Shown piece by piece: positions 29,150 to 52,310 of a stretch of DNA of 64,000 nt (positions are counted from its first letter, which is position 1; every line of letters starts with the position of its first letter). The notes beneath the pieces were generated by a model, which was given only the letters and a program-made list of their open reading frames with translations, searched no databases and was not told where the DNA came from. Source of the DNA: Phallusia mammillata (taxonomy: Eukaryota); contig OZ281499.1 in NCBI GenBank assembly GCA_965637545.1, positions 9,424,001 through 9,488,000 of the forward strand, read 5' to 3'. The translations under genes and the position numbers were made by a program.

Positions 29150-29192
29150 GAAACGTTCAGGTCGTCGTATGTCCCAAAGTTGAGAACTTTAA

Positions 29193-30030: not shown

Positions 30031-33000
30031 TTATATTGCTATGTAGTTGGGGATTCGTTCTGGAAGAAGGTAGTTGTAAGGAAATTCCAAGTTTTCGTTT
30101 CGCTGTTTAATTCCCTCTGTAAAGGCGTCAAGATCTGATTTGTAGGACTCTTGTATGTTTTGGACAGCTTCCTCGGTAAAAAGCTTCTCTGGGTAGTTGC
30201 CAATAAACACCTGTGACAGACAAAAATGTTTTTTTAGTTTGTTTAAATTTGTGCCAGGGTTATATAGACAAGGTTATGTCGGTCTATTAGGTCATAGCGA
30301 TAAATGTAAGTTGTAAATACGATGCTAAAAGTTGATTACAAAAAGTTTAATAGGAAACAATTGCATTAAGAATGAATTGCTTAAAAATGCATTCTATTTT
30401 TTATTACACAATGTGTTTTTACTTGAATTAGGCAAAATCTTTTAGCTTAACTTAGGTCCGAAGGCTTAGGACCTAAGCTTTCAAAACCATGTATTTCGAG
30501 CCCCAAGTAATTTAACCCCAAATCTAATTGCGCATCAAACAATCGTCTTAACCATTTCTTGACCATTGTTTGTCGATGTGCACAATTTAGGCGGCTTGTT
30601 AGGCAAACAGTCATGTAGGCTAGAAACAGTGTGCTGGTTATCAAAAGTTTTTCGTGTTCGCTAATGCGTAATACCCGACGTACGGTAGACTTGTCTTACC
30701 TCTTTTTCTGAATAGGTCGAAAGTATAAATGAGAACACAACATACACGATACTTAGTTCCTGGCCAGGCAACGAGTCCAAAATTCTTTTCATTGTTGCCT
30801 GAAAATATACGACATTTTTAACCCGAAATGCCATATCATTTTATGTCTCCAAAGTGATGCAAGTTAAATTAATGAGAATTCTTTTAAACTGTAATTGGCT
30901 CTTTGCAGTCCCTTCAAGGGTATTTAACATATATGTAAGCAGCAGGGTTTGTAAAACCTCAAGTAGGCCAAAACTTGTTCATCAATTTTTTTCTAATGTT
31001 TGTGACAAAATGCAAAAGATTTTCGGTGTTTTATGCGGTTGTGCCACACCAAGCATATACCTCCCCCTTCTTGTGGGGTGGGAGCCTCATTCCTGCTGGC
31101 ATTGAAGGGATGAACTTGTAGGCGTCAAACTGGCCAAAGTTTACAGCGGCGTGTTGTGCTGAGCTGGTGAACATCACTGTAGTACAGATCTCAATCTATA
31201 AAAAACGTAGAAACTCCTAAACACAATTCACATGCTGGCCGCTTTTCAGTCGGTTTTACTAAAATCTAAAAGCAAAATCACTTGCAGATAGTATTCTTTT
31301 TTGTAAATATTATTTAAAGAAAACCAACATTTCGGCGCTCCCCAGTTAATATTAAACTTTTTCCCGCCACCTTGGTCTTTGCAAACGTAGATGCATTATT
31401 ACGTAATATAATCGTGTCTTGTTCTTTTCAAACTGACTGATTTTTGTGAGTTTAGAATTGTTGCAGTTATGGTTTATTACAGTTAACTTAGCCTTCAATC
31501 AGTAATAATCAGTAATAGTTATTTTTGTCCGGCAGGTATGTGAAATCATTTAGATAGATTGCTTTCTGAAGTATTCTGTTTGGACAAAAAATGGTGCCTT
31601 TATCAAATACCATCGACCTCATTTTGGCAGGTAATATACCATAAAAATATTACATTAGCAACTAGATTAGATTTTGTAGACTATAATACATCTCTAGATG
31701 TCTTTTCAGTCCGTTGTTGGTAAATAACAAAATTACCAGTTGTTCTCTTGTTTCTAAGCTGGTAGGCATTCCTCTTGTGTTTGAGTCTTGCCATGCGAAG
31801 CCTTCCATTGCAATATCATTTGTCCAATACTGTAGTTCATCATCTTCTTGTATATCCTAATTACAAATCAAGCATGTTTTGAAAATGAGGCATAAACAAA
31901 TAGTCAAAACTGTCAAAGGTTTGTTGAACTATGTAAAAGGTGACCAGAAATAGGCCATAATGGCTATAGTGTAGCCATCTAACGGTACTCCAGTTTGTTT
32001 GGAATAATAGGCTTGTTGGCAATAGTCACTGCGACCTATCTCTTGTCACCAGCTGCACTGATGAGACCTTTTAGTCCGAAACACTGTGCACTGTCTGCAG
32101 CTTATATTTTGTTAAACTATGTTTACGATTTTAGTATAGTATGCAACGCTAAACGTACCTGCTATATTAGTCATTAAGCTAAATTCTAACCTACCTTATC
32201 ACAGTGGTAGTAATAGTTGACAACATTGGCAACGTATTTCTCCATAATCTTCCAAAGTTGGATGGCATCGTCTCTGTAGTAAAAACCTGGAAGGACTTCT
32301 GCATCACCAACGCCTAAAAATACAGGTCTTTAAAAACTTATTTCACAACACTAAACATATTGTGAAGATAGGGTAGCCTAAAGCCTGATAATGTAAAATA
32401 AAGATATTGTAGAGTGTATAGACGGCGATACTACAGTTTCTACTTCCCTATAGGAATTTGTATACTAGTTTTTACCAACTATGGGGGAACTCCTTTAAAC
32501 AAACCAAACGCGCTCTAACCTACCGTATTTTTTGATGACTTTCGGAATTATCAGATCCTCAAACTTGAAAGTTTCAAAAACCTTTGCGCCGAGGCCAAGG
32601 GCAGCTAAGAGAGAAAATAAATGTCAATAGTATGCGTTGCCTTGTATATGAGTTGGAAGACGAGCGGGGCTTCTTGGATCCCAACTCCATGCCCAATCTA
32701 AATTTTTGGATCTCAACTTTTACTGTTTTCGAGTGCGTGTCATAGATGACGAACGTCAGGACGTGTGGATATCCATTTTGGTGTGTGGTCTGACTCATTT
32801 GGTAGCCCAGGTTCTCAAATGATGTCGCTTTTTGCGTATGATACATATACCTGATGTGTTTGTGGATGCGAAGTGGACGCAAGCTACAAACCTACACTAC
32901 GTGAGCGATTCTTCTCATTTTTCTTTTTTTTAATATATTTTGTCATTGTAAGCAGTACTTATTTTGGTTAAAGCGGTTAATTACAATTTCACTTTTCCAA

Positions 33001-36000
33001 ATTTGCGGATTTCGCACTGCATAGAATTTGCCATGTTCAGACATGTTCTGGAGCAATTCATACGTACGGATTGCAATCGCGTTGTTGACTGGACCGCCCT
33101 CTGGAAGCAAAGTCTGTCGTCCGTCTGTGTTGATCGAAACTACGTTCTTTAGGTGAGGTCGCAGGAGTTTGTAAATCGGATGACAGCGCGGTAAATCTCG
33201 AAACACAGCAATCGCAACGGGTTCCATGATGCCGTGGGTATACAGAAAATGATAAACCCACTGTTAAAGAAAAAGCTTTTATGTACAATATATAATGCAT
33301 TTTTGTTGCAGTAAAGGTTGGATACTAGATTTTGAATCTCTTGGCATTCGCTATGTGTTTTTTTAACAAATGTGTATGTGCTGATATTACGAAAGGCAAT
33401 AAATAAGTTTTACAATGAGACCGACTAACACTTTACTAAGCATAGCCTACTTGCAAAAAACGTCCAATAGCAATGCAGAGGTGTATTGCTGCTCTGAACT
33501 TGTTTCTTGCAGGATTTATGAGATCTTCAGATCTCTATTACAATCTAATATCTGACTGCAATTTACCTGATGTATGTTGGTTTCTGTGCACTTGTAGTAC
33601 ATCTTGGCTAGCATCCAGTCTTCCTTGCTGTCAGCAGCAGTAAAAAGGTAATCTCTATCTCCAGGGACAAGTTGAATAGCGATCGGTACAAACTTATTGT
33701 CCGAATTCACATAGAACATACAGATGGAATTGGCACACTCAATCTGAAAACCGTCGGCAGTCGAGTTTCGGGGAACTCCCGTTAGATACTTGCTACCATC
33801 GCTTACGTAGATTTTGCCCGCCTAAAACAGTCAAAAAAGTGAATGGTTTGGTTTATTGTTTTATGCTTCAATTGCTCCCTGTTATATCTATTTCTTTGAT
33901 GCATGTTGCACAAGTTTAGTTTAGAAGGGTGCTTGAGTAGGTCGCATGGCGGAACAAAATAGCTACAAGCCGTGCCCAATATTTACCCACAATCCTTAAA
34001 TTTGATTCATGTTTCGTCGTTTCAGTGTAGACAATTAATTGTCCATACATAAGAAATATATACCAGTTTCGCCTAGGCCTGCCTTGTAACACTAACATTC
34101 AAGGATTTCTATGGCTAGTGTTCGACTGGAGGAAATGCCTCCAACCAGCACTCTGATTATATTTTCGTTTGCAAAGCCCTGAAAAGATTAGTTTGCAGTA
34201 TAGTCTTTTTCTGCTTTAGTTTATAGCTGAGATTTTAAACTGATTGGTCTGTGCAATGGCCCTTTCGACCGTTTTTCTGTGTTTATTTAGTGTTTCTATA
34301 CCTGCATCTCCTCCTGAAGGGTTGCTCCGTTGCTTAACAATTTACTGATGTCATCATTAGTGACGTCAAAGCCCGAGGGCAAATTGTCTTGGCATCGGAA
34401 AAAGGCAATTTGACTAACACCATTCAACGTGGATCGGCCCATGCCTTCATCGGTATCCCAGCTAAACAAGCAGTAAGGTTTAAATTTTTTTGGACTTTAA
34501 TTCCTAATAATTACAGGTTAATAATTTTTTAACAACGCCGTTTTTCGCAACCCTACTTTAAAACATGTAACAAAAATTTCATACTCGTCTGGAACTTTTA
34601 GAGAAGTTTCACGGTCGATTTTTTCGTACAGTCGGTGGTAATCCGAAATCTCATCGATAGGGGAGAATACACCTTAACAGTAAATACTAAATTAGGCCTT
34701 CAGTACACTTAAATCGGTCTGTGTTTTTTGTAATGTAACACAAACAAAATTGATGATTAATGGCATTCTCAGTTCGACTGGTTGGCAATGAGCGCGTGTT
34801 GGTTCTGGACGATTTTTGTATGAGTACAGTCTTACAGCAGTATGACACGGAAAAGGCCCATGTTTAAAGCTGGTGCGTTAAGTTTAATTAAGCTTAGAAA
34901 CGGTTTTTCGTACTTTGTGGAATTACTCACAAAACTCACGCTTAAACTTTTTAGGTTGTTATCTCAAGCTAAACTATCACTTATGATGGCATGAGCATTT
35001 GCCGAAACCAGAGTTGTGAACGGGTCCTGAAAACTGGAGCCCAACTTGAAAGTTCAAGCCCGAAACCCGACCCAAACCCTAATCGTCTTTGGGAAGCCCG
35101 TTTAGGCCCGAAAGTTTGATGTACAGGCGTATAAATTAAAGCCACATAACCCCCAAGACCACCAAAACAGTAGATAACTGGTCTTGAACAAGGCGTTTTA
35201 GGACTGTTTGACATTAGGTCAGGTCCAGCAACTGGCTACTTGGCTATTTAAATTTATTTAAAACAATTCTTACACATAGTAAAATCATGCCAATAAACAA
35301 TATTTTCATCCGTTACTTTTATCATTAAACTATATCACTTACCATAAAACTTCTGCACAAGTGCGTTCAATTTTGCCGCTGTTCTTGCATCTTTTCGATT
35401 TCTAGTCATCGATTCACTCTGTCTAAAGATTTTTGGGAGTTCATTATATTTTGTGCCATTAATAGAGCGAGGCATACCCCAGCCCATTTCTCCTTTCGCC
35501 ACACGAGGGCACCATCTAAATCTGGATTGGTGGCGTTCGATTTCTTGTCGACGTTGCGACTTCAGATACGGATTAGTTATGTTTTGTGGCAGGGTTGCTA
35601 AAACAAGGAAAATATATGTACTGCGCCGTGGTTCTCTTTGTCTCTCATAAATGTAATGAACTTAAAGTATAACAATCGATTTGAAAAACTTTCTTAATGC
35701 GGAGTATTAAAAAAGATTACACTTCAAACCTAAGGTTCGAAAAGCTGGTGGTAAATTTGCCTCCGATGCATTGCTCTATATATGGAAACAGGTACCAAAG
35801 AACAAAATTAGTTGATACAAAACTTTGGAATATATATTTTGCCCCTTATTGGCATCATCAGTTTCTTATTCAAATAGAATTTTATATTTCAAAGTTTTAT
35901 ATCGACTAATTTTGTTCTTAGGAATCCGTTTTCATATTTAGCATTGCATTTAGGCAAAACAGCGATCGTCGTTAAAAATGTTGCCTGTCAGGGGGTCGGA

Positions 36001-38097
36001 TACTGCTCACTTCCTTGATTTCCCGAGAGGTAAATTGACATGCTAATAAAAAATAATTCGAGTTTGATTGGTGTGTGAAATTATAGCGGGTTAAGAAAAC
36101 TTGAAAAATCTGCAAAAGGGTAAACGAATAAAGAAAGTTTGAGAACCTATGGCCTCACATTTCGTATAAATTGAAACAATAGGTTTACACGTACCCTTTC
36201 CAGCTACAACTTCATCTTGGTCCTCGATCCAATCATAGATAGGAAATTCAACTTCCTTGCCTTCATATTTCACGATGATGTTGTTGCATAACCATTCGTC
36301 GTTGGCACCAGCTTTTTTGAGTTCTATAGCATAAAGTTTAATAAAAAATGTCTACCAAATCGAAAGTATCTAAAACAGTGGTTCTCAAACTTTTTTGACC
36401 GCGACCCAAATTTGAGTTTTATGAACATCTCACGACCCAAGCCTCAAACATCAAAAAATGTAACAACTTCGAGGCCACGTTGTCGCCGCATATGAGTCTG
36501 CCCATGTCAAAATGGCTGCGGGTTTAACGAGTTCGATTCGACAATACTACATAACACAACACATATTGTGGCTTTGTAGCACCATGGTCATTGATAGAAG
36601 TGAATCCCAAATCTAAAAATGTTTCCGTGTACGAATACTTACTCATCCTCAAACGCTAACTGGTACATCTCCACGTTCAGTTTTGCATGATTAACTTTTA
36701 TTCCCCATGCTATGACGTAACAATCGCCATGTGCGTAACAGCAAAAATCAGAAGGCTTTTGTCAATGATTAGTTCATTTTACTGTGCAACGTGGTCGAGT
36801 GAGGGGACTTTACTACTACAACATTAGGTAATTTCGTTTGTGTTTACTTAATGCGGTAATAGTTCGTTTGGACAGAATTGAACCACCATAGCGCGACCCA
36901 TTTTTTGACCCTGCGCGACCCATACTTTGAGAACCACTGATCTAAAAGGTATATTTATTTATGTATACTGCAATCGAGACAATAATCGTGGTTTTCCTAA
37001 CTTACTACTGACTATGAATATCAAAAATTAAGCTTACCAATCGATTATCTGATATAGAAAGATGCGCACAAACCCATACTGTTTGTCAGTACAAAATGGC
37101 GTGTTTCTATTAATTTGTGATGTTTTGTAAAGTTTAGACTTTCATAGACCGGTGTTCGGCAACCGCCGGGCCTCGACCAACATTTTTCCTGGTAAAGATA
37201 AACTCGGTCCTCGATAAAATTTCAGTTTCAAAAACGGCCCGCAGTGCAAAAAAGGTTGCAGACCCCTGACATAGACAACGTGCTCTATGTCTGTTAAACT
37301 GTAAACCGAAAATTTGTGGCCCAAATCTACAGTACTTTAAAGCAATGTGTTGTCATGCAAGGCAATTTTCACCAGATGGATTGGGACATACTTTGCGTTG
37401 GTCAAATAACCTAGAAGATAATTTTCCCAAATTGTACAAGTTCTCTTTACCTAATACAGTACTTACTGATTCGCAAAATAATAGGCAAACCGACATCTTT
37501 TGCTATAATATAAAACGTATTAACTTGTCCCTTCTCAAAATCATCAACAAGAAAATTATCAAGTTTTTTCCACTGGGTGGCGCTACCATCCTGACCGATC
37601 AGCATAACCGTGACATCAGCGTCCGTGTTGCTATCTGCATAAGCATCTCCAGTCTGTAAAAACGCATATGTTGGTAGTCAAGAAATTTGTGTTAACTTTC
37701 AATTTGACATAATCAATTTAATTGCCATGAAAGTGACTGATTGCAAAAAAATCGGCGGTTTTCATTCAAATAACGGTTTAGGAGGCAGTAACAAAAATTT
37801 AGAATTACTGCTCTTAATAGTTGGACCCAGAGAAACACGCCTGTGACACTTAAGATTAGTTACAGCAAGGTGAACAAATTATTAAGATCTACATAGAAAA
37901 ATTATGGACTTGTGTGAACTAAACAAACAAAGAATTATGGTCTTGTGTGAACTATGTGCTATCGCCTTTCAAACTGCAAAAACGTCATTGTCTTTTCCAA
38001 GAAACAATGCTTAACATTTATCAGTGTGACTTACGCGAACTACGATTGTGTATTTGGCATTTAGGTCATTAGCCGTTTTGCTTTGTCTTTTTCCCAT
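30031..38097 (-). CDS. Lipoxygenase LOX-A (PLAT + catalytic domain), 14 exons, 687 aa, Coffa-site Gly
   Basis: Exons 38097-38035, 37653-37467, 36323-36195, 35597-35343, 34672-34585, 34461-34302, 33821-33567, 33260-33068, 32604-32524, 32313-32195, 31856-31737, 31195-31061, 30798-30700 and 30210-30031 (2064 nt, phases consistent). Fe-ligand motifs [20 protein letters not shown] and C-terminal IPNYIAI*. Confidence 0.93.
35009..35260. mobile_element. Truncated copy of CAGAGTTG-terminated MITE (family 2)
   Basis: Shares the AGCCCG/ACCCG-rich terminal array with 42605-42930 and 48201-48561. The right end is not defined. Confidence 0.55.
36376..36939. mobile_element. hAT/Charlie-like non-autonomous element
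   Basis: TIRs CAGTGGTTCTCAAA / TTTGAGAACCACTG and perfect TSD ATCTAAAA. Confidence 0.9.
37150..37268. mobile_element. Short hAT MITE
   Basis: Ends CGGTGTTCGGCAACC / CAGGGGTCTGCAACC (reverse complement) and TSD TCATAGAC/ACATAGAC (7/8). Confidence 0.7.
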
Positions 38098-39008
38098 CTT
38101 TGCAATGTCTTTAAAGAAAAACTCTTTTTAAAAGAAAAAAACACCAATATCAATGTAAAACCAAAAACGAAAAGAAAAACGTTTACGAACTCACAGATTA
38201 CATGTATCGTATGAGACATTTTTGGTAATGAAGTTAGCTGCTTGTAGGAACGGTTTCTAATTTTTTTCTTTTTTTTCTTAATACAAAATTACCATTAAGC
38301 ATTTTAAAAAAACATTTGTTTGTATCCCATTTTATTGCGATGTCCTTCTTAAAAGAATCTTAACGCCTACTTCAGTCGCAAAGTTATAACTAGCATTTTT
38401 ATAGCACTTTACTACTATATTATCACCACAGAAGATGTTAGTAGCTGCTCTCAGTCTATTCTTTTACCTATTTTTTTTATAAAAGTGACGCGTTTACCAT
38501 TTGCGCATCAGGGATATATGTGAGTAGTTACCCTGATGAAGACAACCTTTATAGGACGTCGAAACGTTGGTACAAAAATGCAATTGCCAGAAAGTTGATA
38601 CTATACCTGACAGCTACAGCTTATATGAATTGGAACATAAAATGAAAGTACGTTGCATTTTATAATACGACATTCTCACTTCGTGTTACTAAACTTGACT
38701 GTTTTTCACAAAATTCGTGCTGCAGGTAGGCTATACCACGCTTTTTGCATGATGCACTGTGCACTTCCTGTAAATTTGAGTGACATTTAAAACAAAATGT
38801 CAGCATTATTGATAAAAGACCAAAGGCTGTTGCAACCTTACTGTGCTCAGATTAATTGTGGATGAGTTTGTCCAATCTTTTGCAATATACGCTATGACAA
38901 ACTCTAAAGGAAATATTATTCGCCGATGACTAACTGAAAACGGAAGGTAATTCAAGTATATTCTAACTTGTGACAACATATGATATGACAGAACTCAATG
39001 TCCAACTA

Positions 39009-39992
39009 TTAACAGAAACTAAACAACTCTTGTATGCATTGATTTTGTCCAAGGATTTTTCGCCGCAAATTTAGATACGGGCTTTTTAAGTTACGTACAC
39101 AGTGAACCCCACGATTCACTACCACGGTCAGTGGCGTATCCAAGGGGGGAGTTTGGGGGTCCGGTTTCGAATCTCGGAAGGATGATTCCGCAAATTCGCC
39201 ACCTGACTGCATGGGCTGTTTCATCTGACGGCGGGTTGTCACAGACGACAGGACACGGATAAATGCGCTTGACACGTTACTCTCACTGGTCGGCGCTAAA
39301 ACAAGACTGTCATCACTTGGTTGCTCGAGAATCTGATGTAACGAAGAAACACGACTCTTTGCTTCCAACATTTGCACCTTAACGCTAGGGCGATCCCTAA
39401 ACAGTTCTTGATCCTGCTCCTCGCCGACAGTATGTGATATGCCGCTCTGCTTCGCCGTCGTCTGGTTCGAAGAAACCGTCTCGTCTCCCTCCACCGAATG
39501 CAATTGCGATTTGACCAGCTCCTGCGATAACTCAGCTTGTTGCCCAACGGTCATCGTCTCAGGCGTGGCGTTTTGCTCCACTGAATCGCAGATTTCCGTC
39601 GTCTTTTGGTCCAAAGAAACCGTCTTGCTTCTCTTCACAATCTGCAGATCCATTTTTACGACCTCCTGCGATGAGTCTGCTTTAATCGTTTTCATTGCCA
39701 GTTCGTGTTCCATTTCACGAATCCTTTCTTCCCTGTTTCGTCTTTTCTGTGCAGCCTCGGCATCGCGTCTTCTTTGCGCAGCCTCTGCATCACGTCTTAT
39801 CTGTGCAACCTCTGCATCGCATTTTCTCTGTGCAGCCTCGACATCGCGTCTCCACTGCGCAACCTCGGCTTCGTTGTACTCTAGCCCCGCAAGTTCATCA
39901 AGTGTCATCTGCTCCTTCACGAACTCGCGTACCTCCTCGTCAACATACGCTAGCTGCTTCCCTAATTCCGCGTACTCCGCCTCAGACATCAT
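39009..39992 (-). other. 327-aa chimeric ORF: retroelement gag-like N-terminus reading through a hAT TIR into flanking DNA
   Basis: Starts just downstream of the LTR and PBS. ELGKQL..EEVREFVKEQ followed by coiled-coil RRDAEAAQ repeats. PDPQTPPLDTPL is the reverse-complement TIR of the enclosing DNA element. Confidence 0.6.
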
Positions 39993-40039
39993 TGCCGATC
40001 TTACAGGGGTTAGTGTTCAACTTCGCGTTTTTAAGTCAG

Positions 40040-40057
40040 ATCCCGGACGAGCCCCCA
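40040..40057 (-). promoter_or_regulatory. Primer-binding site for tRNA-Pro
   Basis: TGGGGGCTCGTCCGGGAT, the canonical 18-nt PBS-Pro, lies 2 nt downstream of the LTR end. Confidence 0.92.
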
Positions 40058-40059
40058 GA

Positions 40060-40488
40060 TGTCACGTTCCCGTTTTCACGGGTACGCAAAAGATTGGGAC
40101 TGACTATGGAAGTTCCTTAACAGCTAACGCTCGTGTACTCTGATCGGCAGCAAAAACTTTCCTTTTACATTTATTCACGTTCAACCACACGTAATCAAAA
40201 TAACAAACAAACAATCCAGCACTATTTTGCAGTTCTCTCAATTCTATGTTCTATCTCCGTTATGTTATCCTTAAATCGTGAAATAGGGGCTCTTATATCG
40301 CCTGCGTAACAATGATGGGGGAAAAGGCGATACATCCCTACAACCATTTCCCATGGATAAAACAACGGACAAGGCAACGGGTAACGGCAACGATAGACTC
40401 TAGAGTCTAGACGTACAGAAATTATCCGTGACGCGTTGTAACTGGATCGCAGGATATTGTCATGGGGCGGTCTAGAATATTTGTGACA
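40060..40488 (-). mobile_element. 5' LTR (429 bp) of a probably Gypsy-type retrotransposon; no partner LTR seen
   Basis: TGTCAC...GTGACA inverted termini, followed by the PBS and a gag-like ORF. Confidence 0.8.
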
Positions 40489-40916
40489 CAGCTGCAGTTT
40501 AAGTAAGCTAGATGGCAGCGGCGAAATCAGGAAACTACAAAGCTGTCGCGAAAATTATTTGTTATTTGTAAAATTATTTGTTAGTCGAAAGTTGGATTAG
40601 GTTTCGGTCTTGTACCTTCGGGTTAAAGTGCTCGTTTTTAACAAGAAAACGAAATAGGCAACGGGACAATTGAGTGGTAGTTTGACGTGTGAATTACGTA
40701 TTTAGTTTCGTGGGGTCTAACGTATTTGTGTGGGAAATTTTCCACAGATCTAATGACGTCATTAGGGAAATTCCCAAAATAAAATGTTGGACCCCCCCCC
40801 CCCCTTTAAAAATTTCTGGATATGCCCCTGACCACGGTCACATGGGTACCAAGGGGTTCACTAAAAAGTTATGTAAACATATGCATTGTGTGTATGACAG
40901 CATACATTATCTAGAA

Positions 40917-41524: not shown

Positions 41525-41698
41525 TTCTAGAATGAACGGTGGTATGGCGCCCTTGCCTGGTTCTACCAACGTTTCCCCAGCGGGCTGTCGCATCTGTTAA
41601 TAAAGTCTGTAGCCCGTTTTACCTTGCCCAGCCGATTACGACCCTAGCAGTTTGACCATTCCTTAGTTCTACAACACTGACACATATTTAGCCCTAAT

Positions 41699-41878
41699 CA
41701 GTGGTGGGATTCAATGTTTTTGTCAGCCGGTTCTATCATAAAAATCATATTTTTCAGCCGGTTTTGTTACAAAAAGTCCATCGACAGTAACCAGTAATGC
41801 TAACCGGTTCGCTGATCTCAAAAAAATTCGTGAGACGGTTCTATAGAACCGGTGCGAACCGGCTCAATCCCACCACTG
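41699..41878. mobile_element. hAT MITE family 1 (inverted copy of 1066-1241)
   Basis: Same TIRs and internal AACCGGTTC motifs. TSD GCCCTAAT/GTCCTAAT. Confidence 0.88.
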
Positions 41879-42604
41879 GTCCTAATAGAGTGAAATAAGC
41901 TCAACTTAAATCAGTATCGCTTTTTATCATTTTGTGTGGACTGTATCGTTTTTAGTTTGCATTAAAAGAGCCGCGCTAAACGCTAGAATGTAATTTACGG
42001 ACCAAGTATCGTGCTGTTTCTGCTTTGGGCACTTGCGTTTATAGAGTTTTCTATTGGCTCTGAGTGTTACTTAACAATTCAAATTTTGTTTAACCCTCAA
42101 CGGCGTAAACATAATATTGACTATAACTTTTATGCATTAAAGCAGTTAAAAAGCAGTGATAACCAAGTCGCCACGAACTTTAATTTTCTACGAATCGGCA
42201 GCGACTGCAATTAATTTACAATGGGTTTGAATCAGGAAATAAGCTTGATCAAAACAATGACTGTGTGCAAACTGACGTACGCCATGTGAATGATTGATTC
42301 ACAACAACAATCTAAATACTGCAGATAGTTTTGCGCATAATATTAATAACGCCATATCTTGTTATGCAACCAAATGCACAACAACGATTTTATTCGTAAA
42401 TGTTCTTTCAAAGACCATAGACCAAAATCTGATCAATCAGTCCAATTTATATTTGCAAATTTGACAAAATTATCATTTTCGTTTTCAACCGCCAACTTGC
42501 ATACGAAAGCTGGTGAAAATCCGTTTAAAGTCCTAACCTGGATAAATCTCAAATTTCAAATGGTTCGTGGCCTAAGATGGATTAAGAAACTTCATTAGAT
42601 ATGG

Positions 42605-42930
42605 CAAAGTTGTAAGCGGACCCGAAATTTGAGCCAGAACCCGAAAGCATAAGCCCAGGCCGAACCCGAATAGTGTTAAAAAAGCCCGTTTAAGCCTGAA
42701 AGTTTGATTAACAGGTCTATAATGAAGAAGACACACATAATGGAAAATAACAGACAATGGCCCAAACAAGATGCTTTAGGGCTGTTGGGCATAACGTTAT
42801 ATTCAACTAGCTTGATAATTGATATTTTAAAAGTTTACTGAACAGAATGTAAAGTCAGGTCCGAATCAAGCCCGTTTGTTAAACAAAGCCCGAACCCGAC
42901 CCGAAAAGCCCGGCCCGACTTACAACTCTG
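42605..42930. mobile_element. MITE family 2
   Basis: Ends CAAAGTTGTAAGC / CAGAGTTGTAAGT (reverse complement) and homologous to 48201-48561. TSD not evident. Confidence 0.7.
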
Positions 42931-43970
42931 AACTACACTAAACATTTCACTAAGCTCAGATAAAATGTTGCTGCTCGACTTAATAAACAACACAAATGCT
43001 AATTAAGTCCTATCAAATCTGTAAACAAAATATTCATGACAGCTTCCTCTAATTGCAGGTAGCAATTTATAACACACATTTTTTATTGCTTATTCTGTGC
43101 TCAATACTTTATCGTTGTTTTCGCAGTTGGCTTTACAGTTCCCTGGGTCTAATCATGAACTTCCGTAAAGTTACAGAAATTTGTAGGCAAAGCAGACAAC
43201 AATCAACATATTGAATCTGCGGATGTTATAGCTGGTTGCTGGAAAATTACACAAGCACACGCAACACAGCACTTGCCATGAAATAAAGCTTGCAAATTTC
43301 GTTTCATGCATAAACAACTGATCACAAATAAACATAACTTATAAAACAATATTAAAGCGTAAATGGCAGTTTTTAAATTTTATTGTATTTTTTGTTTTAC
43401 TTGGTTATGTGAGGCAAGCAAAGCATTGTACAACAGCTCATAAACTTGGCAGTACAACATATGAAACAATACCAACTGCACATAAAAAAAACAAGCATAC
43501 TGCATCGAAAATTGTAGCGTTTGTAGACTGCTGTATGCGATTTGGTTATTAGATTTAGAGATTTAAAGAAACGTGGTTCGTGAGGAAAATTTGTTCAGAA
43601 TAAGTCACAACTACAGATATCTATTCTTGCTGGAGAGAATCGACTTCTTATTCATGCTTCTGACGTTTGGTGATGGTTATTTCAGCACAGCCCATACCAC
43701 AAACAGGTGGTCCTGGCTTGTTTACGATCAGTTTGGCTTGGTCATTGGTTTTGTTCGTGATTGCTGGTCAATCCTGCTCAGTTATTGCGAATAATAGTCA
43801 GGTTTACTGTACATCGAGTTTTGTGCTTTGTAAGACTTTGTCAAAAGAACGTTGCAGTATTATTATTACAATTGTTTGTTGCACGTAAAAACTTAATTAC
43901 AGCATTGCTTGATACTCATTTTGGTAAAAACATTTTAAAAAAGCGGTTGGTCAGATGTGTAGGGACAGCT

Positions 43971-46900
43971 CTATATGGCAATGTAGTTGGGAATTTTTTC
44001 AGGGAGTAAATAGGTGTATGGGCGCGAGATTCCTGCATTTCTCTGTTGTATTTTTTTGCCAAACACCTCTAGGTCCTCTTTAAAGATGCGTTGCAAGTTT
44101 AGGATCGAATCTTCGACATACAAGCGTTCGGGAAAGTTGCCGATATACACCTGGAAAAGAAAACGCAGCAAGATGAAAAAAATCTCCGGAGATTTTAAGG
44201 GGTCCTGAATAAACGACTGATGTTTTAGAAAGTAGACTATTTTTTATTAAAGTTTGATAAAGAAAGGTGTTTAAAATTATGCTTTGTGAAGGTTTATCTG
44301 ATACTTTTCTACTGCTATTGAAACTGCCTGTTTTATTTGTCGTGATGCAATTGTTCTTACCTCGTTGGGTGCGTACGACGACAACACATAGCTGAACACG
44401 ATGTAAGCTTGACTCATTTTCATGTCTGGCAACGAATCAATAATTCTTTGCTTTGAACCCTACGTCAAAAATTACAAAGACTTGTAAAATTGCAATTTAA
44501 TAATAATGGTTAAAATGTGATTTATCCACGTCCTACACTATTGTAAGACAGTTAACAAAACCAGTAGCCTTTCGTCTGTTTTTGTTAATGATCCGCTAAG
44601 CCTAAGAAGATCAAAAGATGGAGCAATCAGAGGACATTTGCAAGGTTGTAGATTTGAATTTTGTTCATGTCTTTCTAAAGTAGTAAACTTAAGCGTTATT
44701 CTTACAGACCCATGAAATTAAATCCAAAGCCACATTAGTTTTGCCTGCTCATCTAAATCACAAAAAAACAATTAATCTTTTTTCAGAGGCAAAATCGAGC
44801 ACTTGCACTCCCCTTAACAAAATCAAGCGCAATTCAAATATCGGAAGGGAAAACATAATCAACAACAGAAAAATACAAACTGAAATATAAGCATAGAAAT
44901 GGCTTGCTGACTAAATGTGGGATTTCTGACAAAATTAAGGTCAAATATTAATGTTGTAGCGACCCCTGTTGCTTATTTATTTCTTACGAAGCGTGACGTT
45001 TGCCTTTTTCCTATTGTGCGTGTGTTTTGCCTTTTTCGTTTGGTCCGCACGTTTGCTATGCGTTTGGTTTGACGCGTCATTCTATTATTTGCGATTGAAA
45101 TAAACGGACGCTACAATGTAATAATTTTTTTGACGGTTTGGTGCAGGTAGTCTATTTTTTAACTTACTTCTCCCCTCTTGTGTGCTGGTAATCTCATACC
45201 ACCCGGTGAGCTCGGAATAAACTTGTACGTTTCAAATTGACCGAAGTTGACAGCTGCATGCTGTGCTGTACTCGTGAAAATAATCACCGTGCAAATTTCG
45301 ATCTGAAAAAATACAGCACAATTTTGATAAGTATTCCTAATTTTTCTTTGATTTAAAACCTGCATGCCAACGTTCAATTTTGCTGTTTTTTTTTTTTCCA
45401 GTCCAATACAAATTTCTGTGACAAGGGCACCCTCGGTATTAGGCGCGATAACAGGCGGCACTCACTCAAGACAAGTTATCCTTTATGCTGTCTTCAGAAA
45501 CATTGTTAGTACACAAATATATCCTAAAGCTGTGCTCTGCAGCCAGAGTGCTGCGTGACTTTGCTACACTGGTTGACTCCATCAAAACACTCCCAAATAA
45601 TTAATACTAAAAGCGCAATATACACAGAAGGTTTTTTTTTAACCTACGAGGTAAATTTGATTTACTTTTGTCAATTTTTTTGTTTAAATGGACATAACTT
45701 ATCAGTTTTTGATGTTAGAAATCCTGTGCATCACCCCGACATACGCAATATGTCGCCCACCCTATATATAACAGGCGTAACGCGTGGCATTAAAACAATT
45801 CTTTAACGAGTCGTACCGCGAGACACAAAAACAACGATACTATATCTTTTATTAACGAAACTGCGCTATTTTTACAATATTATCGTTAAAACAACAAAAA
45901 TTATACGGAATAAATGTTGAAAGATTCAAATTCATACATATAAAAGTCAAATATTTACCAATTGTTCGCGCGTATCTAAATGCTCAGGAATTCCTCTGGT
46001 GTTATTGTCAAACCATCCAAATCCTTCGTTAGCGAGATCCGAAATCCAGTCTTGCAGCTCACTGTCTTCCACAATGTCCTAAAAACAGTTCTTGGTTTAT
46101 TCAATTTGCTTTAAAATCTGCAACCCTCGGACCTTAGCAAAACAGTACATTAGCAAGCTCTTCCACCAACAGCCGCATAGGTTGTCATTTTACCGTAACA
46201 TGAGTTAAAAACAGTAAAAGGTCAGTTAAGTCATTTTTGTTACTTGGTTGCTTGTATAAAACTGTTTGAGTATTCCGGCAACAAAAGATTCCATAATACT
46301 CCACAGTTCCAATGCATCATCCCGATAATAGTACTCGGGTAAGATTTTCGCATCATCCAAACCTAAAACGTTTTAAAGTATTCTAAAACCATGTCTATTG
46401 GCATGCAAATGTGAGTGGTTTAAATGTCATTGTAATTTTTTATTGGGTACATCTAATTGCAAAAAAGCATTGAAATACAGGAATGGAAATCTCACTTACC
46501 AAGCTTTTTTACCAGTTTGGGGATGCAAAGATCGTCAAAGTGGAAAGTAGCGTAAACTTTCTTTGCAGTTTCCGAGGCAGCTGTAAAATATATAGGCGCA
46601 ATGTTTAAAACATAGATTACGTTTCCAAGCAAATCATCTCACAAAAGAAGTAAACCGAAATCGACAACGGTTACTAAATAGTACTACGTGAGACACAAGA
46701 CACAAGAACGTGAGATTTAGCATTGGATTTTAACAGTTTAGTTGTAGTTTTTCCACAAAGGTCTGTCGGAGCAGTTGATTTGTCACGGCGCCGTCGGCTT
46801 GCTAGCATTTAATGTTTTCCCGAGAGTTTGTACCGTTACGTACTATTGTAATAAACTTTGCAGTATAAACTCTACCAAAACAAGCAACCGAAATCAGATT

Positions 46901-49900
46901 CAACAAATGCTAAACTCAAACATTGTTAGCAAAAACAAAATCAAGGACACTTATATCAAACCTATTTAAATTTTGAGTCACTTCATACACTTTGTCCAGT
47001 TACTTACATATCGCCAGTGCCTTATTTGCCGCCCCATCTGGAGCAATAAGAACCTTCCTCGCATCCGTGTTAATTGCAGCCACGTTGCGAAGATGAGTCC
47101 TAAGCAGTTTGTAGATCGGATGACAGCGCGGTAAGTCCCGGAACACTGTGATCGCTACAGTTTCCATAACACCATGTGTGTACAAGAAATGATAGACCCA
47201 CTGCACAGCAATGAAATCGTTTTTGAAGTAAATTATCGGTGCACTTTTAGGAGTCGTATGAAAAAGATATTAATGTTATGTAACAAATTTACCAAAAAGT
47301 ATCCTGTTTTATCATTTATAACCTTAAAATTTTTTTAGGATGATTTTACTGTCAGATGTCTAGAGTAGTGGTTAAGAATCACTGGATTGTGTTTTACCAC
47401 TTACATCATAAAGTTAATCAAAAAACCTTGAATGTATTGGTACAGCCAATTGTTTCAAAAACCCACCCATTTTAGTGGGGTCAATGGGATAAATTTGAAA
47501 CTACAATAACCCAATTAACAGTCCCGTATAATTTTTTGTTCTAAATCGCCTTTTTTTCAAATTTTAACCACTAGAGGTGGTTTGTTACTGATTCTGACGT
47601 CAGGGAAGAAAAAGTAAAAATGCGACGTTTAGGGAAGGGATCCAAACTTTTTTTGCCCTCAAAACGGTTTACCTGATGTGAGTTCTCAACAGCACATCGA
47701 AAGTACATCTTGGCTAGCATCCAATCATCTTTATTGTCAGCAGCAGTAAAAAGGTAATCTCTATCTCCAGGGACAAGCTGGATTGCGATCGGTACAAACT
47801 TCTTGTCCGAATTTACATAGAACATACAGATGGCATCTGCACATTCAATGTTTGCCCCAGCTGGTGTTTTGTTTCGTGATACGCCAGAGAGCATAGCGTG
47901 CATGTCGCTGATAAAAATCCTTCCCGCCTTTAAAGTTAAAAATATTTGTTTACACTGGTTCCTAAGCTAAGGGTGCGCAAACCGCTCGTGGCACGTGGGT
48001 TGCTTTATGCTATATTCAAGATTGAGAACGAAGAGATGTAGTAATTATAATGAAGTACAGTAAGCCGGTTGTTTTGGATTAATGCCAGAGGTTTGAAGTT
48101 TTTGGCCAATCTTAACGCTTGCTGCAGCTAAACTTATTTTCTGTGTAACGATCAATCGACACGTCCTACATTAGAAGGTCATGTTATGACAAGGTGAAAC
48201 CAGAGTTGTAAGTCGAGCCGGGCTTTTCAGGCTGGGTTGGGGCTTAGATTTTTTTTAAAAACGGGCTTGACTTTACACTTTGTGCCAGTATTTTAAGAAA
48301 AAATTAACTAGGTAAGTAGCCAGTAGCTGGACCTAGCGTAATGTCGAACATCCCTAAAACACCTTGTTCGGGAGCAATTGTCTATTATGTTTGTTGTCTT
48401 GGTCTATTCTGAGGCTTGAAGTATGGGCTTGTCAACCAAAATTTCGGGCATAAACGCAACGGATTTAGGCTTCTCAAACACGATTTGGGTTCGGGCCGGG
48501 TTTCGGGCCTGTACTTTCGGACCGGGCTTGGGCTCCAATTTCAGGCCTGTTTGAAATTCTGGGCGAAACGAGACCTATATATAATGTTAATGTTGTGATC
48601 ACTTATGCTTTGTTTGTCTTTACAAAATAAGAGGCTAATTGCATAATTTGTACCTGCATTTCGTCTTCAAGTGTTTTCCCGTCACTGATAAAGGTCGCTA
48701 CGTCATCATTGGTGACGTCAAACTTGTCAGGCAAAGAAGAGCAGCGGGAGAAGCATAGGGGGGCTATCCCGTTCATTGTATAGTAACCCAACCATTCGTC
48801 TGTATCCCAACTATACACAAAAGTAGTTTTACTTGTTGTAAAGTGGCCTTATAAGTTAAAAAAACCCAAATGCACAAGTTTCCACAGATTACATATTTTG
48901 CCAACGGTTTTCGAATAGCCAGTTCCATATTTAAACAGAGCAGGGAATCACAACCCTTTCGATAATATGGGTCGTAAAATTTGTCACCAGCGGTTTAAAG
49001 CCAATTATCTAGCAAAGGTTTACTGACACCAATACATGTATTTTCATACAGAAGCTCACGGAAGCAGAAATTGGTCTTCCTGAGAGCATAGGACCGTCCA
49101 TATGACCGCGGGTCGTGCACCCCTAAAACAGGGTTTGGTCAACGAAGTTAGAGAATAGCGAGCCACTTACCCCTCCAACAAGTTTCTTGCATCTTCTTCC
49201 TCCAGACGTTTGTAGAGCTTGTGATAATCATCAATGTCGTTTAGTTTGTTAAACAGCTCTAAAAATAGATTGAATCATAACAAAGTTAGTAAGCAAATGC
49301 TTGTTGAGTTTTTCTCGTATATAGGTGGCGCAAAGAGCTGAATTATTTATTTAGCAGATTAAGACTCAGGAACTTGGCTGAACGGTCTGGCTCGCCTGAC
49401 CCATATACAGACATAAAACCATGATCGGCATTCGTCCCCGGGAGTGTCCTGGGTTCGAACCCCGTGAAAAAAAAAGACTAATGCAAAAGAATAGCTTTGC
49501 AGAGAAATAAGAAAATGCGAGGTTGAGTTGTCTTCTTCATCTTAAACTACAAGTTGTTCTTGTGGTAGACCATGTCTAAAAATGTTAATCATCACAGGTA
49601 TAGTTCACGTATGTCCAAACACCAGACGACACATACTTAACTTTTACTCAAGATGTGCGCTTAAAAAGTTAATGTTTCGCAAACTCACTTCAAACGCACT
49701 TCAAAGCACTTACGTCCGACAGTTTGAAGCAAAGCATTGGTTTTCGCTTCGAAACGTATATCATTGCGCGCGCTGTTGCGTATTTCATCGGTCATAAAAA
49801 TCTTTGGGAGTTCCTCGAGTGATGATGCAGACAGAAATCGCGGTAAACTGTAACCAAGTTGTTTTGGAGTACTGCGAGCTGCCCAGTTAAAACGTACACG

Positions 49901-52310
49901 GGATTCATCGATCTCGTTTTTACGACTGTTCGTCAAATACATGTTGTTGACTTTCTGAGGCAGGGTGGCTGCAAAAAACAAAGATTTTTTTGGGTGTCTT
50001 CATGCCTCTCATATATTGGTTGTTGGGGGAATTTTAAGACTAATAAGCTATGTGCGTACTGCACTTGAAATGAAATCCTATGCTACGGTTTTAATGCTAC
50101 GAAATGTTACGGTTTTAATGCTTGGGGGTTATCATAACTGAATAAATAACATTAAACCATGCAGCGTTTACCCTTTCAATGACCTTTAAGGAAAAACATT
50201 CGATGACTTCATAAAATATTAAGAACTTTGATGTTGTGGCATTAAAATTGCATACAAATGATATCTATAGTTCCAGTTTTGGCCCAGACATGCAGGTGTA
50301 ACAAAAACTCAAATTTAAATAATGGCAATGGTTTATAGTCCGTGTTCTTATTACTTCACCCCACAAATTAAAAACGTTATTTTGTTTTCAAGTGACAAGA
50401 AGACGTTCCGATTTTTTTGTTTCGCTTTTCTGGTAAGGCACGATTTTGTACATAAATCATAAAATGACCACAGGGATGCTGTTAGGCTTATTAATGATTC
50501 CAGTTTCCGTCTTCTGAAAATTAATTTTAAATAAACAATGTCTTGACGTCTAATATGGCAGCTACTGCGAAGAAACTTTTACCACGTTAAACAATAATCC
50601 GTACGCCGAAACAATGATGATTAATCAAAGCTGTTCTGCCAAAGTAAACAACATTGACATGTAAGTATGCCGAATCGCCAGAGGGAAAAAAACTATAATT
50701 TTGCGTACGGCATGAAAGGCAGGTCAAGCGAAAAATACCTTGTGCTCTGCCCACTTCGATTTTTTCATCAATCCAATCGTACACGGGATACAAAGCTTCT
50801 TCTCCGTTTACCTTCACAACGATCCAGTCGCAAATCCATTCGTCGGTTCCTCCCCAGTGCTTAAGCGCTGTGAAATTAAGCAAGTATCAGACGAATGAAC
50901 AAATATGCCATAATCATTAATTGATTTTGCCAGATCGTTGATATGCATGTGAAAAAACACGTCGTCGAATATTCTTTAATTGTGGTTAATCCCTAAGGCA
51001 ATGGTTGCCTACCTTTTTCGACGAATTCCTCCCTACTATACTACATAGTAGATGCTAAACAGAATGAGACAATTTACAAGTACAAAATAACTTCTAATTT
51101 TTGCGTTTAATGCTAATTGAGTAGAAGACACAATTGGTGTCAAATGGGATCATGCAGCATACTTCGCACTTCGCAGTATAAATATTAGGTAATAAATGCA
51201 ACACGGTTGAGGTAGAAAGAATCTTACTGATTTTGACAAGAATTGGAAGACCAACATCATCAGCAACCAAATCAAACTTGTCATGTTGTCCCCTTTCGAA
51301 GTCGTCTTTTAGTAAATTATCCAATTTATGTCGTCCCGTCGTACTCCCATCTTCGCCTACTAACTCAATGTACACTGTAGAATCTGTTCCAGCCTCTGCG
51401 TATCCATCGCATGTCTACAGATAGATGTAAAGTCTAAGTATTTTGTATTTTTGTTTGAGCATTGTTTTTTACGCTTTTCTAAGTCGGAATATACATATGG
51501 TATTTTACTGTAAAAAAATATTCCCGGCACCTTTTTCAAATTTCAGTAAAAATGACGTATTCCCCGGGACTTTTTTAAATTGTATCCATACAAAATATAA
51601 CACAATTCCGGCAACGTAGGCAGGTTGCATTCTTGTGTCAAATTGCCACACACGTGATGATTGATTAACACCGGCAATTAAAATTCACCGTTGCGCTATA
51701 CCACCAACACGAATCAGTTTGACCATAGCAAAACGGACTCTTGTAACACCACCAATGCACATCAGCTTATAATTGTGCAATATGTATAAAAGGAGCTGGA
51801 ATATCACTTGATTGTGGTCGGTACAGAAAGGCACTTAGAGGTTTTGGCGTACTTTTTTGCGCACAAATCGCAAATCAATACAACTTAAGTACTTAAGAAG
51901 TGTTCAAACAATTAAAATGATTAAAATTTACATGCAATCGATTACATTAAAATGTATGGATTGTTTTGTTTCAAACTTTTAAAGGTATCTCTGTATATTT
52001 CCACACAGGTAACCTCTGATAGCAGCGTTTAATGTCATAGATGCTGCTGTAATTTTAAATAGGATAGGTGAAAACAAAACATATAAAGGATTTTAAGTTT
52101 CTACACAGAGCTTTATTATATAGGTCCACTGACTTAATGCATCCATAAAACGAATCCGTTTGTACAGAAAGATTGAGAACCACTGGTCAAATTTGAGGTA
52201 ATAATTTTTTGTTTTTCAAAACTTACCCTAATTTCAATAGAGTAGGTCGTTTGGTGTTTTTCTGGCTCAGTCGTATAATAACCGAAAAGTTTCGAAAATA
52301 ATCCTCCCAT
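43971..52310 (-). CDS. Lipoxygenase LOX-B (PLAT + catalytic domain), 14 exons, 693 aa, Coffa-site Ala
   Basis: Exons 52310-52227, 51414-51228, 50867-50739, 49968-49714, 49258-49171, 48810-48654, 47927-47673, 47200-47008, 46580-46500, 46362-46244, 46078-45959, 45302-45168, 44459-44361 and 44150-43971 (2082 nt). Intron positions and phases match [31 protein letters not shown]. Confidence 0.94.
48201..48561. mobile_element. MITE family 2 in LOX-B intron 6
   Basis: CAGAGTTG / CAGAATTT (reverse complement) termini and TSD GGTGAAAC/GGCGAAAC (7/8). Confidence 0.75.
49370..49475 (+). mobile_element. Short tRNA-derived SINE-like fragment
   Basis: A-box-like TGGCTGAACGG (49375-49385), B-box GGTTCGAACCC (49452-49462) and an A9 tail. 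Confidence 0.5.

What the first reader, a model, noticed from the sequence alone, without database searches (positions are those of the whole stretch)
30031..52310. Tandem lipoxygenase pair with opposite stereo-determinant (Gly versus Ala at the Coffa site): a predicted R-LOX/S-LOX duo
Seen: two intact 14-exon LOX genes with identical intron phases. LOX-A reads [10 protein letters not shown] (codon 33120-33122, G426) and LOX-B reads INTDARKVLI (47060-47062, A432). Each residue lies 43 aa after the first iron-binding His, the same spacing as H367-A410 in human ALOX5. Established: Gly at this site typically marks R-LOXs (ALOX12B, coral 8R-LOX) and Ala marks S-LOXs, with known exceptions. Inference: a local duplication diverged into enzymes making oxylipins of opposite chirality and probably different position. 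The following pocket residues also differ (PVNNAIAI versus AANKALAI).
Basis: partly seen in the sequence, partly recalled or inferred. Interest (0 to 1): 0.8.

Follow-up and report, generated by a model that had tools for sequence, protein, structure and literature searches.

The report
Tandem lipoxygenase genes, Gly versus Ala
Two neighbouring, intact lipoxygenase genes of a sea-squirt genome differ at the one residue that usually sets product handedness, and the Gly copy is the only one of 23 family members with it, but the handedness is a prediction from a known rule that no enzyme assay has tested.

Summary
Two intact 14-exon lipoxygenase (LOX) genes lie head to tail on the minus strand. 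LOX-A is 687 aa (38097-30031) and LOX-B is 693 aa (52310-43971). All 26 introns are GT-AG and the intron phases are identical. Gly426 (33120-33122, GGA) and Ala432 (47060-47062, GCG) sit 43 residues after the first iron-binding His. Ungapped alignments place them on soybean LOX-1 Ala542, on the Ala of human 5-LOX and on the Gly of coral 11R-LOX.

New context:
- The nearest named proteins are ascidian LOXs (Clavelina 49%, Ciona 42%), so the genome is probably a tunicate's.
- It holds 23 LOX copies, and LOX-A is the only one with Gly.
- LOX-A and LOX-B are sister paralogs, 55% identical, nested among Ala-type copies. Gly is therefore derived by one C-to-G change.
- The Gly-type LOXs of Clavelina and Ciona arose separately; the AU test rejects a single Gly clade.
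- Spliced RNA contigs from four samples confirm LOX-A introns 7-13, and two cover the Gly codon. LOX-B has only indirect RNA support, from one sample.

The R/S prediction is reasonable but untested, and the rule has documented exceptions. This is a new member of a known kind, of moderate interest. Another note of this scan (s1-408732) covers the same stretch for its N-termini.

The parts
30031..38097 (-). LOX-A gene, 14 coding exons, 687 aa. Exons (high-low): 38097-38035, 37653-37467, 36323-36195, 35597-35343, 34672-34585, 34461-34302, 33821-33567, 33260-33068, 32604-32524, 32313-32195, 31856-31737, 31195-31061, 30798-30700, 30210-30031 (includes stop TAA 30031-30033)
   Evidence: Model; all introns are GT-AG. 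Introns 7-13 are confirmed exactly by spliced RNA contigs in up to four runs. Exons 1-6 rest on ORF and splice logic plus collinearity with Clavelina and Ciona proteins. The PLAT domain lies in exon 2 and PF00305 matches exons 8 and 12.
43971..52310 (-). LOX-B gene, 14 coding exons, 693 aa. Exons (high-low): 52310-52227, 51414-51228, 50867-50739, 49968-49714, 49258-49171, 48810-48654, 47927-47673, 47200-47008, 46580-46500, 46362-46244, 46078-45959, 45302-45168, 44459-44361, 44150-43971 (includes stop TAG 43971-43973)
   Evidence: Model; all introns are GT-AG with the same phases as LOX-A. It is collinear with annotated ascidian LOXs. The PLAT domain is in exon 2 and PF00305 matches. RNA support is indirect only: 14% of the sampled words of 43971-49970 are held by run X3, which one search shows to be RNA, against 1% in X1.
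33068..33260 (-). LOX-A exon 8, holding two iron-ligand His residues, the Coffa site and the Sloane positions
   Evidence: Ungapped alignment to structures. RNA contigs X2 record 7 and X3 record 11 cover it with no differing letters.
33120..33122 (-). LOX-A Gly426 codon (GGA), the Coffa stereo-determinant
   Evidence: It aligns to soybean LOX-1 Ala542 and to the Gly of 11R-LOX.
47008..47200 (-). LOX-B exon 8, holding two iron-ligand His residues, the Coffa site and the Sloane positions
   Evidence: Ungapped alignment to human 5-LOX, 11R-LOX and 12S-LOX.
47060..47062 (-). LOX-B Ala432 codon (GCG), the Coffa stereo-determinant
   Evidence: It aligns to the Ala of INTKARE in human 5-LOX.
33234..33251 (-). 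LOX-A iron ligands His383 (33249-33251) and His388 (33234-33236)
   Evidence: they align to soybean LOX-1 His499 and His504.
47174..47191 (-). LOX-B iron ligands His389 (47189-47191) and His394 (47174-47176)
31139..31153 (-). LOX-A His565 and Asn569 in the HAAVNFGQ motif (third His ligand and Asn ligand)
45246..45260 (-). LOX-B His571 and Asn575 in the HAAVNFGQ motif
30034..30036 (-). LOX-A C-terminal Ile687 (carboxylate iron ligand), at the end of PNYIAI
43974..43976 (-). LOX-B C-terminal Ile693

Best explanation
These are two functional iron lipoxygenase genes of an ascidian (tunicate) genome. They were made by an old tandem duplication and are now 55% identical.

After the duplication, one second-codon-position change (GCN to GGN) replaced Ala with Gly at the Coffa site in LOX-A. 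All other catalytic residues stayed in place: three His, one Asn, the C-terminal Ile and the shielding Leu four residues after the site.

Under the Coffa-Brash model, Ala lets O2 reach one end of the substrate pentadienyl radical and gives an S-hydroperoxide. Gly opens the other end and gives an R-hydroperoxide two double-bond carbons away. LOX-B is therefore predicted to be an S-LOX and LOX-A its R-specific partner, for example a 12S/8R pair acting on arachidonate or EPA.

Shown here: the gene structures, the identity of the site, the sister relationship, the derived state of Gly, LOX-A transcription and splicing, and LOX-A being the only Gly copy among 23. Inferred: the product chirality and position, and the activity of both enzymes.
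For: - Intact 14-exon models with identical phases.
- Ungapped alignment of the site to soybean LOX-1 A542, the 5-LOX Ala and the 11R-LOX Gly.
- All iron ligands and Leu+4 are present in both.
- PF00305 and PLAT matches.
- The nearest named relatives are LOXs of Clavelina, Ciona and Styela.
- Of 23 copies in the genome, only LOX-A has Gly; 20 have Ala.
- With the site masked, LOX-A and LOX-B are sisters (99/94), and the next relative is an Ala copy (100/98).
- One clade of ascidian Gly-types is rejected: p-AU 1.4e-5 and 4e-8.
- Spliced RNA contigs confirm seven LOX-A introns, with the Gly codon unchanged in two of the runs.
- The rule is stated in a 2026 review, including the shielding Leu and the 12S/8R partnership (PMC13059375).
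- 8-LOX and 12-LOX are reported for invertebrates, with a Ciona study among the three sources cited (PMC2483973, citing Knight et al. 1999, which I could not read).
Against: - No enzyme data exist.
- The rule fails for bony-fish LOXs, which carry Gly but make 12S-HETE (PMC10531496), and for cyanobacterial 9R-LOXs with Ala.
- Mutating the site changes mammalian ALOX15 orthologs only slightly (same paper).
- LOX-B expression rests only on a word count in one run.
- Exon 1 of both genes and exons 2-6 of LOX-A have no RNA support here.
- The groups for the AU tests were named after I had seen the tree.
Confidence: 0.6

Rival explanations
1. Both enzymes are S-lipoxygenases, or LOX-A gives a mixed product. 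On this reading Gly426 is tolerated without inverting stereochemistry, as in zebrafish LOX1 and other bony-fish ALOX15-like enzymes. The two genes would then differ mainly in expression or substrate, not in chirality.
For: Fish enzymes with Gly at this site make almost only 12S-HETE. There a Gly-to-Ala change merely removes a minor 8R share (PMC10531496). The pocket-depth positions of LOX-A and LOX-B are nearly the same: Ala-Ile versus Ala-Leu. The two genes appear to be expressed in different samples: LOX-A in four and LOX-B in one.
Against: The fish exceptions carry an Arg-Gly motif, and that Arg affects specificity. LOX-A has Asp-Gly-Arg, the same frame as the Ala copies, and otherwise resembles the INT-x-GR motif of the proven 11R-LOX and of the AOS-LOX-length (about 1050-1085 aa) Gly proteins in the search. 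Gly types arose separately in three ascidian lineages, which points to a selected functional change.
Confidence: 0.25
2. The Gly/Ala split is ancient in ascidians. LOX-A then only looks like a sister of LOX-B because gene conversion between neighbours homogenised them, so Gly would be inherited rather than newly derived.
For: The genes are adjacent and in the same orientation. Outgroup LOXs in the tree are mostly Gly.
Against: The two are only 55% identical, so no recent conversion has happened. The next relative, C6_3091, lies 6 Mb away and is Ala. Forcing LOX-A together with the Clavelina Gly-types costs 70 log-likelihood units, p-AU 4e-8. The Clavelina Gly and Ala types lie on different contigs.
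Confidence: 0.08
3. One of the two is not mainly a fatty-acid dioxygenase. It could be a hydroperoxide isomerase or epoxyalcohol synthase like mammalian eLOX3. The Gly/Ala difference would then tune O2 access and activity rather than chirality.
For: Large LOX families often hold specialised members. Six other copies in this genome have lost an iron ligand, so functional drift does occur in the family. That the site residue affects eLOX3 dioxygenase activity is from my own recollection and was not checked here.
Against: Both genes keep every iron ligand and the conserved active-site motifs. Nothing in the sequence marks an eLOX3-like enzyme.
Confidence: 0.07

Closest known systems
Coral R-lipoxygenases: Gersemia fruticosa 11R-LOX (PDB 3VF1) and the Plexaura homomalla 8R-LOX domain of AOS-LOX (PDB 3FG1, 4QWT)
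   Same: The fold and iron ligands are the same. Gly sits at the Coffa site in the frame INT-x-G-R, with the shielding Leu four residues later. 11R-LOX is the best solved-structure match for LOX-A exon 8 (E 4e-14).
   Different: Overall identity to the AOS-LOX-length proteins is only about 33-35%. LOX-A has no catalase-like AOS fusion. Its Gly is derived inside an Ala-type ascidian clade, not inherited from a cnidarian-type R-LOX. Its activity has not been tested.
Human epidermal LOX cluster on chromosome 17p13: ALOX12B (12R, Gly), ALOXE3 and ALOX15B (15S, Ala). This is from general knowledge and was not tested here.
   Same: R-type (Gly) and S-type (Ala) paralogs sit side by side after local duplication, with a gene structure of about 14 exons.
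   Different: It is an independent duplication in another lineage. The ascidian pair is nested in a tunicate-specific clade. The human enzymes are biochemically characterised and these are not.
Zebrafish LOX1 and bony-fish ALOX15-like enzymes (PMC10531496)
   Same: They are chordate LOXs with Gly at the Coffa site.
   Different: The fish enzymes are 12S-LOXs despite the Gly and carry an Arg-Gly motif, whereas LOX-A has Asp-Gly. They show that the prediction for LOX-A can fail.
Annotated ascidian LOXs: Clavelina lepadiformis XP_076825703 (Ala type) and CAK8695669 (Gly type), and Ciona intestinalis XP_002120964 (Gly type)
   Same: They belong to the same tunicate LOX clade and are collinear over their full length. 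Both Gly and Ala forms are present, and the N-termini start with MG.
   Different: Identity is 42-49%. The Clavelina Gly and Ala types are each other's sisters and lie on different contigs, so that pair arose separately from LOX-A and LOX-B. I found no open paper describing their enzymology.

Membership tests
Iron lipoxygenase (Pfam PF00305 with N-terminal PLAT) | Match to the lipoxygenase profile above the curated cut-off | tested here: met
   Exon 8 of LOX-A scores 62.9 bits and of LOX-B 55.1 bits against a cut-off of 23.6. Exon 12 also matches.
Iron lipoxygenase (Pfam PF00305 with N-terminal PLAT) | Five iron ligands: His-x4-His, a third His and an Asn in HAAVNFGQ, and a C-terminal Ile | tested here: met
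   LOX-A has H383, H388, H565, N569 and I687. LOX-B has H389, H394, H571, N575 and I693. The first two His align to soybean LOX-1 H499 and H504.
Iron lipoxygenase (Pfam PF00305 with N-terminal PLAT) | N-terminal PLAT/LH2 beta-barrel domain | tested here: met
   Exon 2 alone matches PF01477: LOX-B 31.4 bits (above the cut-off of 23) and LOX-A 22.2 bits (just under it, for a 62-aa piece).
Iron lipoxygenase (Pfam PF00305 with N-terminal PLAT) | W-x-x-A-K motif | tested here: met
   WMLAK is at residue 363 in LOX-A and 369 in LOX-B.
R-specific lipoxygenase (Coffa-Brash class) | Gly at the Coffa position (soybean LOX-1 residue 542 equivalent) | tested here: met
   LOX-A G426 is placed by ungapped alignment. 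LOX-B has Ala.
R-specific lipoxygenase (Coffa-Brash class) | Invariant shielding Leu one helix turn after the switch (8R-LOX Leu431) | tested here: met
   L430 in LOX-A and L436 in LOX-B. The role of this Leu is described in PMC13059375.
R-specific lipoxygenase (Coffa-Brash class) | R-configured hydroperoxide product | not testable with these tools
   This needs recombinant enzyme and chiral chromatography. Fish LOXs with Gly make S products (PMC10531496).
Expressed gene | Spliced transcripts in independent RNA data | tested here: met
   For LOX-A, seven introns are bridged by contigs in up to four runs, with no depth in introns outside repeats. For LOX-B the result is inconclusive: only a 14% word share in one of those runs.

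The most novel reading that the evidence does not exclude
Ascidians have made an R-type lipoxygenase from an S-type paralog at least three separate times: in this genome, in Clavelina and in Ciona. Each time the route was the same single Ala-to-Gly change after a lineage-specific duplication. This implies steady selection to keep an R/S partner pair, such as 8R with 12S. It also offers natural replicates for testing why the Ala/Gly rule holds in some LOXs and fails in others.
Probability: 0.4. Interest if true: 0.55.

Novelty: new member of a known kind. Interest (0 to 1): 0.4.

Why it matters
If the prediction holds, this genome offers a clean natural test of the Ala/Gly stereo-switch. The two sister enzymes have nearly the same pocket-depth residues and differ at the switch, and independent replicates of the same change exist in two other ascidians. 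That could help explain the known exceptions to the rule. It could also assign genes to the 8- and 12-lipoxygenase activities cited for Ciona. No open paper found here describes tunicate lipoxygenase enzymology, so a 23-copy family with a single Gly member is a useful map for choosing which enzymes to express. It reveals no new kind of enzyme or mechanism.

Tried and rejected
- **Plus-strand reading.** Translating the stated codons on the plus strand gives nothing; the genes are on the minus strand.
- **Whole-protein tools.** The spliced proteins have no reference, so I could not send them to the structure, family or look-up tools. No fold of LOX-A or LOX-B was made, and pocket residues beyond exon 8 were mapped only by motif.
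- **Fetching the other LOX loci.** Nine paralogs outside the large cluster are therefore represented only by about 3.2 kb around exon 8.
- **Word search for LOX-B RNA fragments.** The search for homologous proteins with the LOX-B exon-8 ORF found no candidate in the allowed length range. This says nothing about LOX-B expression.
- **Co-substitutions.** I scanned for residues shared by the three ascidian Gly lineages. Only four weak positions turned up (LOX-A K84, D240, F481, A596), none at a known determinant. I rejected this as evidence.
- **Literature.** Searches for cloned tunicate LOXs found nothing relevant. Knight et al. 1999 on Ciona eicosanoids is not held.
- **A third LOX or a partner enzyme in the window.** None was found. 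The flanks hold listerin, Fis1 and transposable elements.
- **Species identity.** It was not determined; the run and organism names are coded.
Full report
**What is there**

Plus-strand translation of the quoted codons gives nothing.

A self-comparison of all stop-to-stop reading frames in the window paired 13 minus-strand ORFs at 30.0-37.7 kb with 13 at 44.0-51.4 kb. I scored donor and acceptor sites for each junction and kept the pair that fell at the same place in both genes. A short first exon was found upstream of each gene.

The result is two 14-exon models. Every intron is GT-AG, and the phases are identical (0,1,1,1,2,0,0,1,1,0,0,0,0). Exon lengths are equal except exon 1 (63 vs 84 nt) and exon 6 (160 vs 157 nt). 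The reading frames are uninterrupted, giving 687 aa (LOX-A, 38097-30031) and 693 aa (LOX-B, 52310-43971). The site residues are G426 (GGA, 33120-33122) and A432 (GCG, 47060-47062), each 43 residues after the first iron His.

**Is it the Coffa site?**

Exon 8 of each gene aligns without gaps to about 50 solved lipoxygenase sequences.
- In the alignment to soybean LOX-1, the two His of LOX-A fall on residues 499 and 504 and the Gly on residue 542. Ala542 is the residue mutated in the original Ala542Gly study cited in PMC10531496 and PMC13059375.
- LOX-A '[11 protein letters not shown]' lies on 'aINTlGRndLi' of Gersemia 11R-LOX, its best match (E 4e-14).
- LOX-B 'aINTdARkvLi' lies on 'aINTkAReqLi' of human 5-LOX, its best match (E 1e-11).
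- The shielding Leu one helix turn later (8R-LOX Leu431 in PMC13059375) is present as L430 and L436.
- The third His, the Asn (HAAVNFGQ) and the C-terminal Ile are all in place.
- Exon 2 of each gene matches the PLAT domain, and the lipoxygenase profile is matched well above its cut-off.

Membership in the iron lipoxygenase family, and the identity of the site, are therefore not in doubt.

The two positions there known to set pocket depth (+14 and +15, equal to 5-LOX A424/N425) are Ala-Ile in LOX-A and Ala-Leu in LOX-B.

**Expression**

Four runs of one study each hold 9-13% of the sampled words of 30031-36030. When laid on that stretch, their contigs cover only exons and two intronic repeats. 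They bridge introns 7 to 13 at exactly the modelled borders, read as CT..AC on the plus strand, which is GT..AG on the minus strand. The runs are therefore RNA, and LOX-A is transcribed and spliced as modelled. Two contigs from different runs cover the Gly codon with no differing letters, so the Gly is not an assembly error.

For LOX-B, one of those runs (X3) holds 14% of the words of 43971-49970, another (X1) holds 1%, and the other two are not listed. Exons make up about 28% of that stretch. This suggests LOX-B is expressed in one of the four samples, but I could not lay reads a second time. Exon 1 of both genes and exons 2-6 of LOX-A have no RNA support here. They rest on splice logic and on end-to-end collinearity with annotated ascidian proteins.

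**Whose genome, and how many copies?**

A search of protein cluster representatives with LOX-A exon 8 gave the following nearest full-length proteins:

| Protein | Species | Identity to LOX-A |
|---|---|---|
| P0006 | Clavelina lepadiformis | 49% |
| P0001 | Clavelina lepadiformis | 45% |
| P0010 | Ciona intestinalis | 42% |
| P0139 | Styela clava | 39% |

All of these are ascidians. The window therefore comes from a tunicate whose own proteins are not in the collection. The assembly is 240 Mb in 312 contigs.

The lipoxygenase profile and LOX-A exon 8 each find the same 23 copies in the genome:
- 13 in one cluster at contig 6, 3.09-3.22 Mb
- three at contig 6, 11.43-11.46 Mb
- two on contig 4
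- four singles
- this pair

Reading the site in all 23 gives Gly once (LOX-A), Ala 20 times, Val once and Leu once. Six copies have lost the first iron His.

**History of the switch**

LOX-A and LOX-B are 55% identical over 672 residues. I built a careful maximum-likelihood tree of 41 rows with the site residue masked. It includes all the window genome's copies (nine of them partial), the named ascidian proteins and outgroups.
- LOX-A and LOX-B are sisters (ultrafast bootstrap 99, SH-aLRT 94).
- The Ala copy at contig 6, 3.091 Mb, is their next relative (100/98), and further Ala copies lie around them.
- By parsimony, the Gly of LOX-A is derived from Ala by one C-to-G change at the second codon position.
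- The Clavelina Gly-type is sister to the Clavelina Ala-type (98/98).
- The Ciona Gly-type sits among Ala copies of this genome (94/53).

Forcing all ascidian Gly-types into one clade costs 129 log-likelihood units (p-AU 1.4e-5). Forcing only LOX-A with the Clavelina Gly-types costs 70 units (p-AU 4e-8). The groups were chosen after I had seen the tree, which weakens the p-values but not the size of the likelihood differences.

Ancient gene conversion between paralogs could in principle mimic this pattern. It is unlikely, given the 55% identity and a next relative 6 Mb away.

**How it most likely works**

The Ala/Gly rule is established knowledge. Ala beside the bound substrate gives S products and Gly gives R products, because the residue controls which end of the pentadienyl radical O2 can reach. 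As a result, 12S- and 8R-enzymes are mechanistic partners (PMC13059375).

On that basis LOX-B should be an S-LOX and LOX-A the R-specific partner acting on the same pentadiene. The near-identical pocket-depth residues fit a shared substrate alignment. A review of invertebrate eicosanoids says 8-LOX and 12-LOX occur in a range of invertebrates and cites a Ciona study among its three sources (PMC2483973). I could not read that study, so whether those products are 8R and 12S is not established here.

The prediction can fail. Zebrafish LOX1 and other bony-fish enzymes carry Gly and make 12S-HETE, and mutating the site has little effect in mammalian ALOX15 orthologs (PMC10531496). I put the R/S reading at about 0.6.

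**Comparison with what is known, and verdict**

This is an ordinary member of the lipoxygenase family by every testable criterion. Side-by-side R-type and S-type paralogs are already known from the human ALOX12B / ALOX15B cluster (general knowledge). Both Gly and Ala LOXs are already annotated in other ascidians.

The new points are modest but real:
- LOX-A is the single Gly copy in a 23-member family.
- Its Gly is derived after a tandem duplication.
- The same switch appears to have happened separately in two other ascidian lineages.

I found no open paper on cloned tunicate lipoxygenases. I rate this a new member of a known kind, with interest 0.4.

Noticed in passing
window 22484-29890: A BEL/Pao-type LTR retrotransposon lies on the minus strand. 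Its 701-bp LTRs (22484-23184 and 29190-29890) are 98.4% identical. Its ORFs carry Pao peptidase A17, integrase, DUF5641 and a gag-like DUF1759. It ends 140 bp downstream of the LOX-A stop codon. One RNA contig has 170 letters beyond the stop, so the LOX-A 3' UTR may run about 30 nt into the LTR.
   Followed up: partly
G000 contig 6 at 3.09-3.22 Mb (L001-L016), plus contig 6 at 11.43-11.46, 17.05 and 27.03 Mb; contig 4 at 21.34-21.36 Mb; contig 2 at 7.908 Mb; contig 8 at 8.587 Mb: The lipoxygenase family has 23 copies, 13 of them in one 130-kb cluster. Six copies lack the first iron-binding His, for example WIYNYLETH in two neighbours, and AKYRFLQTN, which has lost both His. They look like pseudo-lipoxygenases, in line with scan note s1-380856. 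Two copies at 11.43 and 11.45 Mb are nearly identical.
   Followed up: partly
window 38035-38097 and 52227-52310 (predicted exon 1 of each gene): Both predicted proteins start with Met-Gly (MGKRQSK and MGGLFSKLFG), a myristoylation-type start. Annotated Clavelina relatives start MGCTCGK and MGGGCSK, and an unnamed relative starts MGNCCS. These are myristoyl-plus-palmitoyl-type starts, so a lipid-anchored N-terminus may be a trait of this ascidian LOX clade. Exon 1 has no RNA support here. It is the subject of scan note s1-408732.
   Followed up: partly
window 3349-8583 (+) and 13932-14447 (+): A 1744-aa listerin (LTN1) E3 ligase is encoded as one uninterrupted ORF, and a Fis1 mitochondrial fission protein lies in a single ORF. 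Both appear intronless next to the intron-rich LOX genes.
   Followed up: no
window 32031-32230 and 34831-35230 (LOX-A introns 10 and 4): Two short stretches inside introns have very high summed contig depth in all four RNA runs (50-240, against 2-6 on exons), with many loose ends. They look like expressed repeat or transposon fragments.
   Followed up: no
window 39009-40143, between LOX-A and LOX-B: Overlapping ORFs of 327 aa (minus strand) and 234 aa (plus strand) have no Pfam match. Scan note s1-408781 reads this stretch as a composite transposon.
   Followed up: no
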